The notes under the pieces: model-generated
What the model saw: the letters and a program-made list of their open reading frames with translations, nothing else
Told to the model about the DNA's origin: nothing
Database searches by the model: none
Assembly (NCBI RefSeq): GCF_033153115.1
Contig: NW_026889750.1
Span: forward strand, 17,980,001 to 18,044,000
Source: Saccostrea echinata
Taxonomy: Eukaryota
DNA: 64,000 nt
Direction of reading: 5' to 3'
Position numbers and translations under genes: made by a program
Shown here: piece after piece, positions 22,320 through 41,004 of the stretch
Position numbering within the stretch: the first letter of the stretch is position 1
How the letters are laid out: each line of letters begins with the position of its first letter

Positions 22320-25300
22320 ATGGCGACACCATCTACATTACATAAACTTCCTCTACACTCTGCAGCAAAAGAAAATGATATTGTTAAACTCGAACAATTT
22401 TTTCTTGATGGAGATTCTCATACAGTTAATCTACAGGACCAGCACGGTAGGACGGCACTTCACTGTCTTTTGGATTCTCCTACCTTTTCTGATTTGGAAG
22501 AAGTAAAGAGAGGGATTCAAATCCTTTTAGACAACGGAGCGGATATCAACATCCAAAACGAACATGGAGAGACGCCACTTCATACGGTGGTTAAAAACTA
22601 TTTGGAATTTATTCCAGAAATTATTCGGTACATATTGACTCACAGCAAAAATTACGTGATGGACAAACAGGATGAGAACGGGTACTCTTTATTTCATTTG
22701 TTCATGTCTGACTTCAGTGACCTTGTCATAAAAAGTAATGGGTACAAGAAACTTTCGCAAGAAAAAAATGAATTCCTTCAAAGTTTACTCCGAGGGGAAA
22801 TTTTGCAATACAATTTTTCTGCACTGCTAAATCAAAAGGAACGGAATGGGTATTCTGCGTTCCATACCTACAATGGAAATTCCGATTGCTCCCCAGAAAT
22901 AATACAATTAATGGTCAGATGTGGAGGTGATGTAAACACAGCTTCTAAATTAGGAATCACCCCTCTTATGGAGTCAGTGCTCAGAGGGCGGAGGGATATT
23001 GTGGGAATTTTGTTGAAGGCAGGAGCAAACCCGAATCAAACAGACATATTTGGTCAAAGTTGTATCTTTCGTGTCTATACGAACGATTGTTTTGAATTGC
23101 TGAATCAGTTTGGCGCCGATTTTCACATTAAGGATAAGTTTGGAAGGATTCCGATCACAAATAATGCACTGTACACCCCAGAAGATCTCCCCCATTCAGG
23201 CATTGTCATCTCAAACGAATTCTCTCATTATCCACCTTTAATTGAAAAGTTTTTAGACGTTGGGATTAACATCAATGAATTAGACAAACATGGTTCCTCT
23301 GCACTTCACTATGGTGCGTGGTATGGAGATCCCACAATGGTGAGATCACTACTACAACATGGAGCAGATTTGAATATTTTGGACCACTATAGCTACTCAC
23401 CTTTGGATTTAGCAATGCACGTAGGAAATGATAATCTTTACATATTCCTCGGTAACACAGATGATGGGGAAATTCGACCCGAGTGTGAAACAAGATATTG
23501 CAGACTTCTTATTAATGAAGCTGAAACAGACAATATGAAGACTGTGCTGAATGATTATTTAGGAATCAGAGATGATCCAATTTATCTTGTGACGTCACTT
23601 GCGAAATCCCCGAGGTTAGGAATGACAGATAAAAGACCCGAATCAAGGCTTATCAAGTCGGAGGTAACAGACCTGATGGAAAGAATAGCGGATGTTGTTG
23701 GAAAATTGAATCCGCTTTTTTCCTGTAAAATTTATCCAACAGGCAGTTCGTCTGAAGGTACAAAAGTGGGGGATCCAGACGAATTCGATTTTGTGTTCTG
23801 CTTGGAAAACTTTTCAAAACACTGTGTACCACACCAGGATGATGTTTTATTGAACAGCGGGTTTGTAAGTTTAAAGATTGAGTCTAGTGAAAGCGTGAAG
23901 AAATTTGATTTATTTCTTGATGGAAAGATTCTTTCAGCAGAAGGTGTTCGGGATACTTTTCAAGATCTGGTTACTTCTGCCCTGAATACCGCGAGCACAT
24001 GGACCTCCGAATATTTATATTTCGACGGTCTTCTTGGGTTTCCCATGGATAAACCTGTTCTCAAACTGGAAATCCATTGGTTTGGACCCTTAATGAAGCA
24101 CATGATAGTCGGTGTAGATATTGTTCCAGCGGTTTTGTCGAAGGATTGGCGACCCGTGGAATTAAGTGAAAAACAGCCTCTATTTTCTGTTGAGGAACAG
24201 TATATGTTTATTCTCAACTCACCAGAAAGCTATCAATGGAACGATAAAGACAGTGAGCATCTAGTGAGAATTTCTAGCTGTCTAATGGATAAACATTATC
24301 TAAAGAGCCTTCCTCAAATCTGTACTGAAAGTTACGCAGCAGCCAAAATTCTGAAAAGCTCTAATTTTTCTCCTAATGTTCAGTTTGACGATGATTTCAC
24401 ATCGACAGACTCCTCATCATTTGGTGATTTTGAAGAATCTTCTCAGAATTCGGACGGAAAACAAGACATTAATCCAATGAACAGAAATGGAAGACGTAAC
24501 AAATACAAAAGGGAATACAGCGGTTACAACTCTCAAAATGTACATGCGTTCGTTAAATCGCTACCTTTTGAAGATCCAGTAGAGGTATCAACATCTAACG
24601 GACGATCTGATGATATCACTGACAGAGATGATACACAGAGATCAAAATGCAATTTTACCATGAATTGGCTCATGGACATTGATGATACATGCAAAGTTCG
24701 GAAGATATTTACCCCCAGAGATGAAAACGAGTTATTGATTGATGAGGGTTTTTGCAAAACCTCACCATCTGAAAAGAATAAAGATTAATCCATTTGTTGC
24801 AATAATCGGGAACCTGCAGAGAATGCAGATTATGAGGATAGTGGTGGAGTGCTAGAATCAACAGAGAAAGATACAAACGAAGACCCAATGAACAGTTACA
24901 ACACATTGTCTCACTTGGGCTGTAATGATTGGAATAAAGCCGAAAAAGTCCCAAAGAGCGAGGAAAATTCATCTGATAATGTTGATTGGGAAGGCGGAGA
25001 CATCGTTTCTGCATCAGATGAAATTTCAAGCTACATGTTAAAAATGTGTTTATTCCATGTTTTACAAGAAGAGAAAAATAGAGATTGTGAGGTTCCTTCG
25101 TACACTCTTCTAGAACTGACCATTAAAATTTACCAAAAGCTTCTGGCGTTTGCCAAACAAGGCCGTTTACCTTCATATTTTCTTCCCTTTATCGACGTCT
25201 TTACATACGTTAACAGCCACATTAGAGTTATTCCAGAAGAAGAATTAGAAATGGCGACAAAACAACAGTGTGAACGAATTCAAGCCCTCTGTAAAGTTAT

Positions 25301-25361
25301 TTTGGGTATCTTAAAGCAGAATCCTAATGACTGCACAACCTTAAATGAAGATTCTCGGTAA
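22320..25361 (+). pseudogene. Ankyrin-repeat + cGAS-like (Mab-21/cGLR) nucleotidyltransferase, copy 1; in-frame TAA at 24786-24788
   Basis: ORFs 22320-24788 and 24849-25361 share a frame and are separated by one TAA (AAA Lys in copies 2 and 3). ANK motifs, GSSSEGTKVGDPDEFD, VDIVPA, ISSYMLKMCLFH and LPSYFLP are present. Pseudogene status is unproven. Confidence 0.75.
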
Positions 25362-37854: not shown

Positions 37855-40800
37855 ATGTCTGCTTTGTCAACTAAACATGAACTTTCTCTTCACTCCGCTG
37901 CAGAAGAAAATGACCTGGTTAGACTCGAACAACTCTTACTCGATGGAAATTCCTATACAGTTAATTTACAGGACCAGCACGGTAGGACGGCACTTCACTG
38001 TCTCTTAGATCCCCATACCTTTTCTGATTTGGACGAAGTAAAGAGAGGAATTCAAATCCTTTTAGATAGCGGAGCGGATATCAACATACAAAACGAACAT
38101 GGAGAGACGCCACTTCATACGGTGGTTCAGAACTACTTGGAGTTCATTCCGGAAATTATTCGGTACATATTAACTCACAGCAAAACTTATATCATGGAAA
38201 CACAGGATGAGGAAGGATTCTCATTATTTCACTTGTTCATGTCTGATTTCAGTGACAATGTCAAAGAAAAGAAGGAATATCAAAAACTTTTGCTGGAAAA
38301 GAATGAATTCATTAAAAGTTTACTTTGTGGAGAAATTATGAAATGTAATTGTTCTGCTTTATTGAATCAAAAAGAACGCAAAGGATATTCAGCATTCCTT
38401 ACTTTTCTGGGGAATTCTGATTGCCCCATAGAAACAGTACAATTAATGATTGATTGTGGGGCTGACGTAAACACTTCAACTGAAATAGGAACGACTCCTC
38501 TTATGGAGTCTGTGTTCAGAAGACGGAAGGATATTGTAGAAATTCTGTTGAAGGCAGGAGCAAACCCAAATCAAACAGACATATTCGGTCAAAGTTGTAT
38601 TTTTCGTGTCTATACTACCGATTGTTTTGAATTGCTGAGTCAATATGGTGCCAATTTCTACATCAAAGATAAATTTGGAAGAACCCCAATAACAAATGTT
38701 GCACTTTACACGCCGGAAGATCTTCCTCAATCAAGCATTGTCATTTCACAGAACTTTTCGAAGCATTCACCATTGTTTGAAAAGTTCCTAGATATTGGAG
38801 TAAATTGCAACGAAGTTGACAAGCATGGTTCCTCCCTTCTTCATTATGGGGCATGGTATGGAGATTCCACAATGATCAAAGCACTAATACAACATGGCGC
38901 AGATTTGAATATCTTGGATTTTAATGGCTACTTACCTTTGGATTTAGCAATGCATGTTGGAAATGATACCATTTACAGCTTACTTGGTGGAACTCATGAA
39001 GCAGACACTCGAACTGACAATGAAACTAAGTATTGCAAATTTCTCATTAATGAAACTGAAACAGACAATATGAAGACGGTGCTGAATGAGTATTTAGGAA
39101 TTAAGGATGACCCTGCTTATCTTTTGATGTCACTTGTGAAGTCTCCGAGGTTAGGAATGACGGAAATAAGAGCCGAACCAAGACATATAAAGTCAGAAGT
39201 CACCGGACTGATGCACAGGATAGCAGACGTCATCGGAAGATTGAATCCGCTTTTTACCTGTACAGTCTATCCTACAGGGAGTTCGTCTGAGGGTACAAAG
39301 GTCGCAGATCCGGACGAATTCGATTTTGTGTTCTGTTTGAATATCTTTTCAAACCATTGTATACCACATCAGGATGTCAGTTGTATGAACAGTGGGTTTG
39401 TAAGTTTAAAAATTAAGTCAAATGAAGTTCGAGGGAAGTTTGAATCCTTTCTTGATGATGAGACTTTCTCAGCAGAACTTATTAGGGGTACATTTCAAGA
39501 TTTGGTTACTTTTGCCCTTAACAACCCAGACGTATGGACCTCTGAATATTTGTGTTTTGAAGGTCTAGTTGACTATCCTGCGGATAAACCAGTTCTGAAA
39601 CTAGAAATCGATTGGTACGGTCCCATTATGAAACATATTGTAGTCAGTGTTGATATTGTTCCTGCTGTTCAGATAAAAGATTGGAAACCCGTGGAAATAA
39701 TTGACAAACAGGCAATATGTTCTGTTACCGAACAATATTTGCTTATTCTGCATTCACCAGAGCGCTGTCCTTGGAGCGGTAAAAAATGTGACCAACTAGT
39801 AAGAATTTCCAGCTCTCTTATGGAAAAGCAACTTCTAAGCAGTCTTCCTTATATTTGCACTGAAAGTTATGCAGCAGCCAAAATTTTGAAAAGTTTCAAT
39901 TTTTGTCCAAAAATTCAGTTTGATGAGGAAATTATCCTAGAAACGGTAGGTTCCATCGGAGTTTTGTTTGATGAACCACAGTCAAGTTTGACTGGAAACT
40001 TGGAAGATGAATTGAAGATGGAGGATGAAGGTAACCTGACCAAACGAAAAGAAGGCGATGAAGGCATTATATACGAACAGACGACCAGTCAGATTTTACC
40101 CTCTCGAGTCTCCCATGACATTTCAAAATCTGAAGATGTCATGGATAAAACACAAACTTCCGAGCACAGACCTGTTTTGCCCTGGATGATGGATATTGAT
40201 GAAACTTACAACGTTCGAAAGATATTTACCCCAAAAGAAACTGGAGAAATGAAGAACAAAACATATATAAACGAAAAAATATGGAATGACATATACAACG
40301 TCAATTTTTGAAAAGGGCAGACATAAATTAATCTATTTTGAACCCCTTGAATGTGAGCAGAGTTCCAAAAATTTGAATGAAGGTGGTTCAGAATTGGATG
40401 ACAAAGAGGTGAATGGACAGCCAAAAGGCAGTCTAAACTCAGTAATAGACTCCGAACAAAACTCTGAATTAGATTGTGCTGATAGGAACAACATCACCGA
40501 AAATGTCCATAGAAACAGCACTCAGGACAGTGCGAATGATAGCATCAAAAGTACAAATGATAATACCGACGAAGACGTAGGTAGTGAGGAAAATTCTGAG
40601 AACTTGGAAGACGATTCGTCAGGTGGTACTGAGTGGGAAGGGAGTGATGTCGTGTCTGCGTTCGATGAAATTTCCAGCTTTATGTTGAAAATGTGTTTGT
40701 TTCATGTTGTGCAAGAAGAGAAAACCAAAAACGGTGATGTGCCTACTTTTACTCTTTTGGAACTGACCATAAAGATTTACGAGAAGTTGCTGACATTCGC

Positions 40801-41004
40801 CAAGGAAGGCCGTTTACCTTCTTATTTTCTTCCTTTTCTGGATGTTTTGACATACGTTAAACTCATATAAAAGTGATACCAGAAAAGGATTTAGAAGCGC
40901 TGACTAAGCAACTGTGTGAACGAATTCAAGCTTTCTGTAAGGTTATTTTGGGAATATTGAAGCAAAATCCGTCGGACGATGTTACCTCATTTGAGGACTC
41001 ATAA
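37855..41004 (+). pseudogene. Ankyrin-repeat + cGAS-like nucleotidyltransferase, copy 3; two frameshifts
   Basis: Relative to copy 2: +1 nt near the A6 run at ~40274-40281 and -1 nt at ~40860 (gttaa-act versus gttaacact). The homologous tail KVIPEKDLEALTKQLCERIQAFCKVILGILKQNP ends TAA at 41002-41004. Catalytic motifs are intact. Confidence 0.75.

What the first reader, a model, noticed from the sequence alone, without database searches (positions are those of the whole stretch)
22320..41004. Tandem cluster of ankyrin-fused cGAS-like receptors: candidate innate immune signalling system
Seen: three co-oriented, apparently intronless paralogues, each with ~10 ANK repeats then an NTase core keeping GSxxEG..DEFD and the third Asp (VDIVPA), plus Mab-21 C-lobe motifs. 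No Cys/His zinc thumb follows the RIS helix. Known: animal cGLRs make cyclic dinucleotides for STING and are expanded in bivalves; ANK arrays bind proteins or, in RNase L, 2-5A. Inference: the ANK array may replace direct nucleic acid sensing, gating second-messenger synthesis on a pathogen or host protein ligand. I cannot tell whether this exact architecture has been studied.
Basis: partly seen in the sequence, partly recalled or inferred. Interest (0 to 1): 0.85.

Follow-up and report, generated by a model that had tools for sequence, protein, structure and literature searches.

The report
Oyster ankyrin-fused cGAS-like receptor gene cluster
Three tandem oyster genes fuse an ankyrin-repeat array to a cGAS-like signalling enzyme, but only the middle copy is intact, and this kind of fusion has been catalogued before though never tested for function.

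Summary
Window 22320-41004 (Saccostrea echinata chromosome) carries three co-oriented paralogues with no intron in the coding sequence. Each has about 10 ANK repeats, a Mab-21/cGAS nucleotidyltransferase core and a Mab-21 C-lobe.

Only copy 2 (29558-32722, 1054 aa) is intact. Copy 1 has an in-frame TAA. Copy 3 has a +1 and a -1 frameshift.

New here:
- The ANK concave groove is predicted to dock on the enzyme's own N-lobe (ipSAE 0.68, best control 0.15).
- The 260-aa acidic insert holds a conserved beta mini-domain shared with mussels and a crinoid.

The fusion is not new. Li et al. 2023 list ANK-cGLRs, including a clade member, but report no ligand, product or structure for one.

I read copy 2 as an active, probably non-nucleic-acid-gated cGLR that feeds STING, which the genome encodes. 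The scan had already noted the insert and the truncations on this same window.

The parts
22320..25361 (+). Copy 1: an ANK-cGLR paralogue in a single frame, interrupted by an in-frame TAA at 24786-24788 inside the insert. The C-lobe downstream is still conserved.
   Evidence: dN/dS of the C-lobe after the stop against copy 2 is 0.10. That C-lobe is 74% identical to the Crassostrea-clade outgroup P0006, against 68% for copy 2.
24786..24788 (+). Premature stop codon of copy 1 (TAA, where copies 2 and 3 have AAA).
29558..32722 (+). Copy 2: the intact ANK-cGLR gene, 1054 aa, with no intron in the coding sequence.
   Evidence: (P0001).
29558..30712 (+). Copy 2 ANK array (residues 1-385, about 10 repeats).
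   Evidence: Pfam; AF2 helix pairs; Foldseek hits to ankyrin-1, ankyrin-B and DARPins.
30713..31597 (+). Copy 2 linker helices (386-439) and NTase core (440-680). Codons: G475-S476 at 30980-30985, E488 at 31019-31021, D490 at 31025-31027, D600 at 31355-31357.
31598..32377 (+). Copy 2 insert of 260 aa (residues 681-940, pI 4.3). It has two disordered acidic loops (714-773, 842-921) around a predicted beta mini-domain built from conserved islands.
32378..32719 (+). Copy 2 Mab-21 C-lobe helix bundle (residues 941-1054), containing the ISSYMLK motif with Y948 and K951.
36044..36245 (+). Short relic of an ANK segment, matching copy 2 residues about 62-140.
37855..41004 (+). Copy 3: an ANK-cGLR paralogue with two frameshifts, a +1 near 40280-40284 and a 1-bp deletion near 40859-40861. 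NCBI model LOC133195188 (P0003) bridges the first with a GT..AG intron at 40213-40360 and ends early at 40867.

Best explanation
The locus is a tandem, birth-and-death cluster of three ANK-cGLR genes in Saccostrea echinata. The copies duplicated before the S. echinata / S. cucullata split. Copy 2 is intact. Copies 1 and 3 were disrupted recently within the insert, and copy 3 also near its C-terminus.

Shown:
- The protein is an N-terminal array of about 10 ANK repeats joined by two linker helices to a bilobal cGAS-like nucleotidyltransferase.
- The catalytic motif (G475-S476, E488, D490, D600) and the pocket residues (R650, S652, E657, K676, Y948, K951) are conserved across a large ANK-fused clade found in cnidarians, echinoderms and bivalves.

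Inferred:
- Copy 2 is a working enzyme that makes a cyclic di- or oligonucleotide second messenger read by one of the oyster's STING proteins.
- It does not sense nucleic acid directly, because it is acidic and lacks a zinc thumb.
- Its ANK concave groove is clamped in cis onto the N-lobe, on helix 540-555 with loop 556-568 and on the WxGxxYK hairpin 586-594 that leads into the strand carrying D600. Binding of a non-nucleic-acid ligand (a protein or a cationic molecule) to the ANK array or to the insert would then alter that clamp and switch catalysis.
For: - Domains: Pfam Ank plus Mab-21 plus Mab-21_C.
- Sequence match to solved structures: cGLR1 8gjy and pig cGAS 4jlx align over the GS...EFD segment.
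- Conservation: in 103 relatives at 20-83% identity, G475, D490 and D600 are invariant. S476, E479, T481, K482, E488, P603, R650, S652, E657, K676, Y948 and K951 are at 90% or more.
- Selection: dN/dS is 0.21-0.26 between copies with dS 0.64-0.72.
- Clade: 132 of the 156 nearest Mab-21 representatives with an NTase match carry an N-terminal ANK array. They come from bivalves, a crinoid and a jellyfish.
- Charge: the Mab-21 domain without the insert has pI 5.4. Li et al. report pI above 8.5 for nucleic-acid-sensing cGLRs and propose non-nucleic-acid ligands for acidic ones.
- Docking: the full-length AF2 model has pTM 0.82. The trans complex of ANK 1-385 with Mab-21 440-1054 scores ipSAE 0.68 (runs 0.62-0.72) against a best control of 0.15. 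That mark was reached by 51 of 78 solved complexes and 2 of 108 mismatched pairs. The runs agree in at least 30% of contacts, and partner pLDDT is at least 76.
- Interface: the predicted contact residues include D322, H330 and D355, the most conserved ANK residues (92-95%), and G589 and K593 in the conserved WxGxxYK hairpin (W587 83%, G589 86%, K593 89%).
- Receptor: STING ligand-binding-domain exons lie on contigs C4, C14, C76 and C8.
Against:
- Two of the three copies are broken, and the S. cucullata orthologue of copy 2 (P0002, 894 aa) also ends inside the insert. The family is therefore dispensable enough to decay.
- The spacing between the second and third acidic residues is 107 residues, outside the X50-90 written in the Li et al. 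motif.
- The docking is a prediction only. D322, H330 and D355 also match generic ANK consensus positions, and mean conservation on the Mab-21 side of the interface (0.31) is not above the domain mean (0.37).
- No ligand is identified.
- Some shrimp Mab21 proteins are reported to signal outside the nucleic-acid sensing paradigm by activating IKK-epsilon (PMC12928593, title and abstract).
Confidence: 0.6

Rival explanations
1. Conventional nucleic-acid sensor. The Mab-21 domain still binds dsRNA or dsDNA on its primary (site A-like) surface, and the ANK array serves only for localisation or scaffolding.
For: All cGLRs with a known ligand sense dsDNA or dsRNA (Li et al.). By my mapping from memory of the cGAS literature, the predicted ANK contact corresponds to site C rather than the primary ligand surface, which would leave that surface free.
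Against: The Mab-21 domain has pI 5.4 and the whole protein 4.9, against above 8.5 for known nucleic-acid-sensing cGLRs. There is no zinc thumb. The spine helix 440-463 carries only +4/-3 charges (sequence). A 260-aa insert with net charge -29 sits on the C-lobe.
Confidence: 0.12
2. Non-enzymatic Mab-21 adaptor. The protein signals by protein-protein contacts through ANK and the insert, without making a nucleotide messenger. Examples are the developmental MAB21L1/2 proteins and the shrimp Mab21 proteins reported to activate IKK-epsilon.
For: The shrimp precedent (PMC12928593, title and abstract). The protein has large protein-interaction modules. No product has been demonstrated.
Against: The catalytic glycine and two aspartates are invariant, and S476, E488 and the pocket residues are 90-98% conserved across 103 relatives at 20-83% identity. 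That is hard to explain without catalysis. Li et al. note that Mab21L1/2/3 lack a functional active site, and this protein has one.
Confidence: 0.1
3. Decaying, functionless cluster. All three copies, including copy 2, are unexpressed relics of the bivalve cGLR radiation.
For: Two of the three copies are broken. The S. cucullata copy 2 orthologue is truncated. No expression data were obtainable.
Against: Copy 2 keeps a 1054-codon open frame. dN/dS is 0.2-0.25 in the ANK array and NTase core and 0.10 in the C-lobe. The Crassostrea-clade relatives P0006 and P0007 were assembled repeatedly from many public runs as complete ORFs on contigs of about 3.4-5.5 kb. That is suggestive of transcripts but is not proof.
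Confidence: 0.1
4. The breaks in copies 1 and 3 are assembly errors or alleles of a single individual, so all three genes are functional in the species.
For: The sequence downstream of the breaks shows no extra decay. The +1 insertion lies in an A-rich tract, GAAAAAATATGG, which is typical of long-read indel errors.
Against: The copy 1 break is a base substitution (AAA to TAA), not an indel. Copy 3 has two separate indels, and it also has Y948F and WEGGD to WEGSD changes at conserved positions. The NCBI annotation also could not model copy 3 as one ORF.
Confidence: 0.2

Closest known systems
ANK-fused cGLRs catalogued by Li et al. 2023 (Fig 1C, Fig S2A, Table S2; Stylophora pistillata ANK-cGLRs; Mytilus coruscus CAC5359674.1)
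   Same: The same architecture, an N-terminal ANK array followed by a Mab-21 NTase with a complete active site. CAC5359674.1 is P0023 here, which matches the Mab-21 part of copy 2 at E 5.9e-46.
   Different: The Saccostrea genes are not in that catalogue (no occurrence of Saccostrea). They belong to a subclade with an extra insert of about 260 aa in the C-lobe. The paper reports no ligand, product or structure for an ANK-cGLR.
Vertebrate cGAS (for example mouse cGAS 4o6a, human cGAS 7ftr)
   Different: There is no zinc thumb and no basic N-terminus, and the domain is acidic (pI 5.4) rather than basic. By my mapping from memory of the cGAS literature, the helix that aligns to the cGAS 'SKMLSKFRKIIKEEI' helix and the hairpin before the catalytic Asp strand are covered by the ANK groove. 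The short basic KKH-type loop is replaced by the 260-aa acidic insert. Sequence identity is only 18-19%.
Crassostrea virginica Cv-cGLR1 (PDB 8gjw; also 8gjy, named only 'cGAS-like receptor 1')
   Different: [quoted passage not shown] Our protein is acidic, ANK-fused, carries the insert, and is 15-18% identical.
RNase L and the autoinhibited ankyrins (AnkB/AnkR, 4rlv, 5y4f)
   Same: ANK arrays that regulate an attached or partner module. In the ankyrins an autoinhibition segment of the protein lies in the concave groove. The ANK part of the model matches these structures.
   Different: There is no kinase-like or RNase domain. The element held in the groove here is a folded enzyme lobe, not a peptide or 2-5A. 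The analogy is functional only and was not tested.

Membership tests
cGLR (criteria of Li et al. 2023, PMC9980059) | Active-site motif h[QT]GS [X8-20] [DE]h[DE]h [X50-90] h[DE]h | tested here: inconclusive
   Copy 2 has P-T-G475-S476, then 11 residues, then E488-F-D490-F, and later V-D600-I. All residues and the first spacing fit. The second spacing is 107 residues, above the written 50-90. A clade member with the same layout (CAC5359674.1) is nevertheless in the authors' table.
cGLR (criteria of Li et al. 2023) | [quoted passage not shown] | tested here: met
   PF03281 matches residues 491-674 and PF20266 matches 953-1021 of the copy 2 ORF. The VIA alignment spans model residues 35-658 of the domain model.
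cGLR (criteria of Li et al. 2023) | Predicted structural homology to known cGLR or CD-NTase enzymes | tested here: met
cGLR | Ligand-dependent synthesis of a nucleotide second messenger | not testable with these tools
   This needs recombinant enzyme assays.
cGAS proper (vertebrate dsDNA sensor) | Zinc-thumb H(X5)CC(X6)C insertion and a basic DNA-binding surface | tested here: not met
   There is no such motif between helices 654-663 and 666-679. The domain pI is 5.4.
ANK-cGLR fusion architecture | An ANK array N-terminal to the Mab-21 domain in one polypeptide | tested here: met
   Pfam. A single ORF of 1054 aa. The same order occurs in 132 of 156 nearest relatives.
cGLR-STING pathway | A STING receptor encoded in the same genome | tested here: met
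   PF15009 STING_LBD hits over the cut-off on C4, C14, C76 and C8. None lies near this window, and pairing with this enzyme is untested.

The most novel reading that the evidence does not exclude
The ANK-cGLRs would be the first cGAS-like receptors that sense a protein, or a protein modification, rather than nucleic acid. The ANK concave groove holds the enzyme's own N-lobe hairpin (the WxGxxYK motif leading into the catalytic Asp strand) as an intramolecular clamp. A pathogen or host protein that competes for the groove, or that engages the conserved beta mini-domain in the acidic insert, would release or reshape the clamp and start second-messenger synthesis. That would be a guard-like switch conserved from cnidarians to bivalves.
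Probability: 0.25. Interest if true: 0.85.

Novelty: new member of a known kind. Interest (0 to 1): 0.45.

Why it matters
Most of the more than 3,000 animal cGLRs are orphans with no known activating ligand, and the acidic ones cannot plausibly bind nucleic acid. ANK-fused cGLRs form a large, ancient and catalytically conserved clade in which the sensor module is likely built into the protein. They are therefore a tractable entry point to non-nucleic-acid ligands of cGLR signalling.

This locus supplies an intact, single-exon coding sequence that is easy to clone (copy 2). It also supplies a specific predicted ANK/N-lobe interface to mutate (D322, H330, D355 against W587, G589, K593), and a conserved insert mini-domain to delete. 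As a genomic feature the cluster is ordinary for bivalves: tandem immune-gene duplication with pseudogenisation.

Tried and rejected
As a result there is no expression test and no read-level check of the stop or the frameshifts.
- Foldseek with the full-length model returned only ANK proteins. The domain had to be folded alone.
- The profile search of A6 against PDB sequences was swamped by ANK hits.
- The ESM Atlas search with the insert gave only weak Mab-21-context hits (scores 0.78 or less) and no fold lead.
- Sliding-window dN/dS among the three copies found no window above 1 (maximum 0.90), so there is no sign of diversifying selection on the ANK surface at this resolution.
- Upstream and downstream regions of the copies share no detectable similarity. 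It begins about 7 nt before the ATG, so no shared promoter motif could be derived.
- Retroposition as the origin of the intronless copies was considered. It is not needed: the whole family is intronless across chromosomes, and the copies are tandem and co-oriented.
- The NCBI-style intron at 40213-40360 in copy 3 has GT..AG ends. However, it removes sequence homologous to conserved coding islands of copy 2 and is 148 nt long, which exactly compensates the +1 shift. I treat it as a modelling bridge over a frameshift, unverified.
- Earlier scan notes by words returned nothing beyond the two notes on this same window.
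Full report
WHAT IS THERE

The window is AT-rich animal DNA (GC 0.28-0.42). It maps to contig C1 at 17,980,001-18,044,000 of a 923-Mb assembly. The proteins it encodes sit on the same 53.47-Mb contig as NCBI LOC133195188 of Saccostrea echinata, so I take the genome to be that rock oyster.

Mechanical ORF listing gives three long + strand ORFs. Pfam finds Ank, Ank_2, Ank_4 and Ank_5 followed by the Mab-21 nucleotidyltransferase domain in each. 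It finds the Mab-21 C-terminal domain in copy 2 and in the short ORFs just downstream of copies 1 and 3. tblastn of copy 2 against the window shows exactly three full-length copies and one small ANK relic at 36044-36245.

Nucleotide identity between copies is about 79%. It is confined to the coding sequence, starting about 7 nt before the ATG.

INTACT AND BROKEN COPIES

Copy 2 (29558-32722) is an uninterrupted 1054-codon frame.

Copy 1 stays in one frame throughout. It has TAA at 24786-24788 where copies 2 and 3 have AAA.

Copy 3 has two breaks:
- a +1 insertion in an A-rich tract near 40280;
- a 1-bp deletion near 40860, GTTAA-ACT against GTTAACACT.

The NCBI model P0003 bridges the first break with a GT..AG intron at 40213-40360. 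That intron is 148 nt long, and the model stops at 40867. The removed stretch is homologous to conserved coding islands of copy 2, so I regard the intron as unverified.

The first breaks of copies 1 and 3 fall within about 15 codons of each other, inside the insert. The sequence there is A-rich and rich in K, E and N codons. Such sequence is one step from stop codons and prone to slippage. I take the coincidence as mutational bias plus weaker constraint, not design.

Downstream sequence has not decayed:
- The C-lobe after the copy 1 stop has dN/dS 0.10 against copy 2.
- That C-lobe is 74% identical to a Crassostrea-clade outgroup, against 68% for the intact copy 2.
- Copy 3 shows two small lesions at conserved sites, Y948F and WEGGD to WEGSD.

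The breaks are therefore recent, or allelic, or errors in the assembly. Reads could not be consulted.

HISTORY

A maximum-likelihood tree of the first 680-720 residues pairs copy 2 with S. cucullata LOC134230760 and copy 3 with LOC134230755, both with 100/100 support. Copy 1 stands alone, and the Crassostrea (Magallana) angulata-type proteins P0006 and P0007 are the outgroup. The triplication therefore predates the split of the two Saccostrea species. This fits dS 0.64-0.72 between copies.

In S. cucullata the copy 2 orthologue ends inside the insert (894 aa), while the copy 3 orthologue runs through the C-lobe to its end, although its model starts at an internal methionine. That is the reverse of the pattern here and is typical birth-and-death turnover.

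The S. echinata genome holds at least seven more loci of the same kind. They are intronless ANK plus Mab-21 ORFs of 856-1051 aa on C8, C29, C1, C12 and C3, plus one on C22 split in two.

THE ENZYME DOMAIN

phmmer against PDB sequences aligns TGSSSEGTKVGDPDEFDF with the GS...EFD segment of a cGAS-like receptor 1 (8gjy, E 5e-5) and of pig cGAS (4jlx).

In an alignment of 103 relatives at 20-83% identity:
- G475, D490 and D600 are invariant.
- S476, E479, T481, K482, E488, P603, R650, S652, E657, K676, Y948 and K951 are at 90% or more.

From my knowledge of human cGAS, not tested here, these correspond to G212/S213, E225/D227/D319 and the pocket residues R376, S378, E383, K414, Y436 and K439.

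There is no zinc thumb. The model has a two-residue turn between helices 654-663 and 666-679. The written cGLR motif of Li et al. is met except that the second spacer is 107 residues rather than 50-90 (sequence).

The Mab-21 domain without the insert has pI 5.4 and the whole protein 4.9. Li et al. report pI above 8.5 for dsDNA- and dsRNA-sensing cGLRs and propose positively charged, non-nucleic-acid ligands for acidic ones.

THE INSERT

Residues 681-940 lie between the helix ending AKILKS and the helix starting ISSYMLK. In cGAS that position is a short loop. The insert has pI 4.3 and net charge -29.

It is not simply disordered. Both models place beta strands at 686-690, 782-786, 792-798, 818-825, 828-835 and 933-939, with pLDDT up to about 93 in the domain model (about 86 in the full-length model). 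Two disordered acidic loops flank them, at 714-773 and 842-921.

The strands coincide with sequence islands (W..E.D....V.K.F.PK, MGMTC.TS...K...KLI.F.P, WEGGD). The first and last islands are conserved, at least in recognisable form, in oysters, Pinctada, Mytilus and the crinoid Anneissia japonica. Most clade members have only 25-50 residues at this position. This cluster therefore belongs to an old insert-bearing subclade.

THE ANK ARRAY AND ITS PREDICTED DOCKING

The full-length AF2 model has pLDDT 81.2 and pTM 0.82 even though about 150 residues are disordered. That implies a defined ANK/Mab-21 geometry.

I tested this in trans, with ANK 1-385 against Mab-21 440-1054. The median ipSAE was 0.68 (runs 0.62, 0.68, 0.72) against a best control of 0.15. 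The mark was reached by 51 of 78 solved complexes and 2 of 108 mismatched pairs. The runs agree in at least 30% of contacts, and partner pLDDT is at least 76. This supports binding but does not show it.

The confident contacts are:
- On the ANK side, the hairpin tips and groove of repeats 2-10: residues 41-42, 120, 175-177, 209-211, 243-244, 273-276, 282-283, 322-335, 355-357 and 364.
- On the Mab-21 side: residues 530-531, helix 540-555 with loop 556-568, and hairpin 586-594.

D322, H330 and D355 are the most conserved ANK residues in the clade (92-95%) and lie in the interface. So do G589 (86%) and K593 (89%) of the conserved WxGxxYK hairpin, whose W587 is at 83%. That hairpin runs directly into the strand bearing D600.

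Two caveats apply. The three ANK residues are also generic ANK-consensus positions. The rest of the interface is variable.

Helix 540-555 aligns with the pig cGAS helix SKMLSKFRKIIKEEI. From memory of the cGAS literature, that helix, the loop before the catalytic Asp strand and the KKH loop make up DNA-binding site C. If so, two of the three site-C elements are covered by the ANK groove here, and the third is replaced by the insert. This mapping is an inference.

HOW COMMON AND HOW KNOWN

An exhaustive HMMER search with the Mab-21 part found 418 cluster representatives at E 1e-3 or better. Of the 156 retrieved proteins with an NTase match (the listed best hits plus those), 132 have an ANK array in front.

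Named members come from Saccostrea, Magallana, Pinctada, Mytilus, Ruditapes, Mercenaria and scallops. They also come from the crinoid Anneissia and the jellyfish Rhopilema.

Li et al. 2023 already list ANK- and TPR-fused cGLRs as minor architectures and mention S. pistillata ANK-cGLRs. Their Table S2 contains CAC5359674.1, which is P0023 here. Full-text searches found no paper that studies the function of an ANK-cGLR. The architecture is therefore known but uncharacterised, and these genes are new members.

MECHANISM, WITH ODDS

- ANK-fused cGLR genes with a cGAS fold and a complete active site: about 0.97 (shown).
- Copy 2 is catalytically competent: about 0.7 (inferred from conservation).
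- Not a direct nucleic-acid sensor: about 0.75 (inferred from charge and the missing thumb).
- ANK groove docked in cis on the N-lobe: about 0.6 (two prediction methods).
- Activation by a protein or cationic ligand acting through the ANK array or the insert: about 0.3 (inference only).
- Output to STING: plausible, because STING ligand-binding-domain exons exist on four contigs. Pairing is untested.

LIMITS

There are no expression data. There is no read-level check of the breaks. No model coordinates were available for inspecting surfaces. The residue equivalences to human cGAS and the site-C mapping rest on memory.

In one script, copy 3 was read through its second frameshift with an X at the break, for comparison only.

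Noticed in passing
window 20001-20768 (+): ORF fragment with a reverse-transcriptase domain (RVT_1, E 6.8e-29), a retroelement relic just upstream of copy 1.
   Followed up: partly
window 56163-57242 (-): Intronless 359-aa ORF with a rhodopsin-family 7TM receptor domain (7tm_1, E 9.2e-19).
   Followed up: partly
window 51138-51479 (+): 113-aa ORF matching the C-terminal domain of acyl-CoA dehydrogenase (PF00441, E 1.7e-10). It is probably one exon of a multi-exon gene or a fragment.
   Followed up: no
window 12885-17433: A minisatellite of about 4.5 kb with nested periods of 21, 42, 63, 105 and 147 bp (CCTGACTGGGTTAGGTTCTAAACTGAC...). It is GC-richer than its surroundings and has a strongly negative AT skew.
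   Followed up: partly
window 4385-5588, 51942-52894 and 60099-61471 (also 707-1745 in inverse orientation): Arrays of a repeat of about 165-168 bp (5.7-8.4 copies, 83-92% matches). The arrays at 51942-52894 and 60099-61471 are related to each other and, in inverse orientation, to 707-1745. The 168-bp array at 4385-5588 showed no match to them in the self-comparison. Satellite-like or transposon-associated.
   Followed up: no
window 36044-36245 (+): Short relic matching ANK residues about 62-140 of copy 2, lying between copies 2 and 3. It looks like the remains of a partial duplication.
   Followed up: partly
L001 (C8:4072500-4079500), L002-L005, L008; L007 is split in two: At least seven further intronless ANK plus Mab-21 loci elsewhere in the genome. 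L001 (1051 aa) matches the copy 2 NTase region at 46% identity and is the orthologue of S. cucullata LOC134228429.
   Followed up: partly
G000 C4:1892521-1893364; C14:124736-184277; C76:768455-807465; C8:9951087-9963873: Multiple STING ligand-binding-domain exon hits. C14 and C76 have equal scores and may be haplotigs, and both look like tandem STING arrays.
   Followed up: no
P0002 (S. cucullata LOC134230760): The orthologue of copy 2 in the sister species ends inside the acidic insert (894 aa, no C-lobe). Across the two species, three of five genes of this cluster are therefore cut in or next to the insert.
   Followed up: partly
P0022 (Ruditapes, 2255 aa) and P0034 (Mercenaria, 2287 aa): Very long relatives with ANK arrays whose Mab-21 matches span more than 1,100 residues. 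They may be tandem double ANK-cGLR fusions or merged gene models.
   Followed up: no
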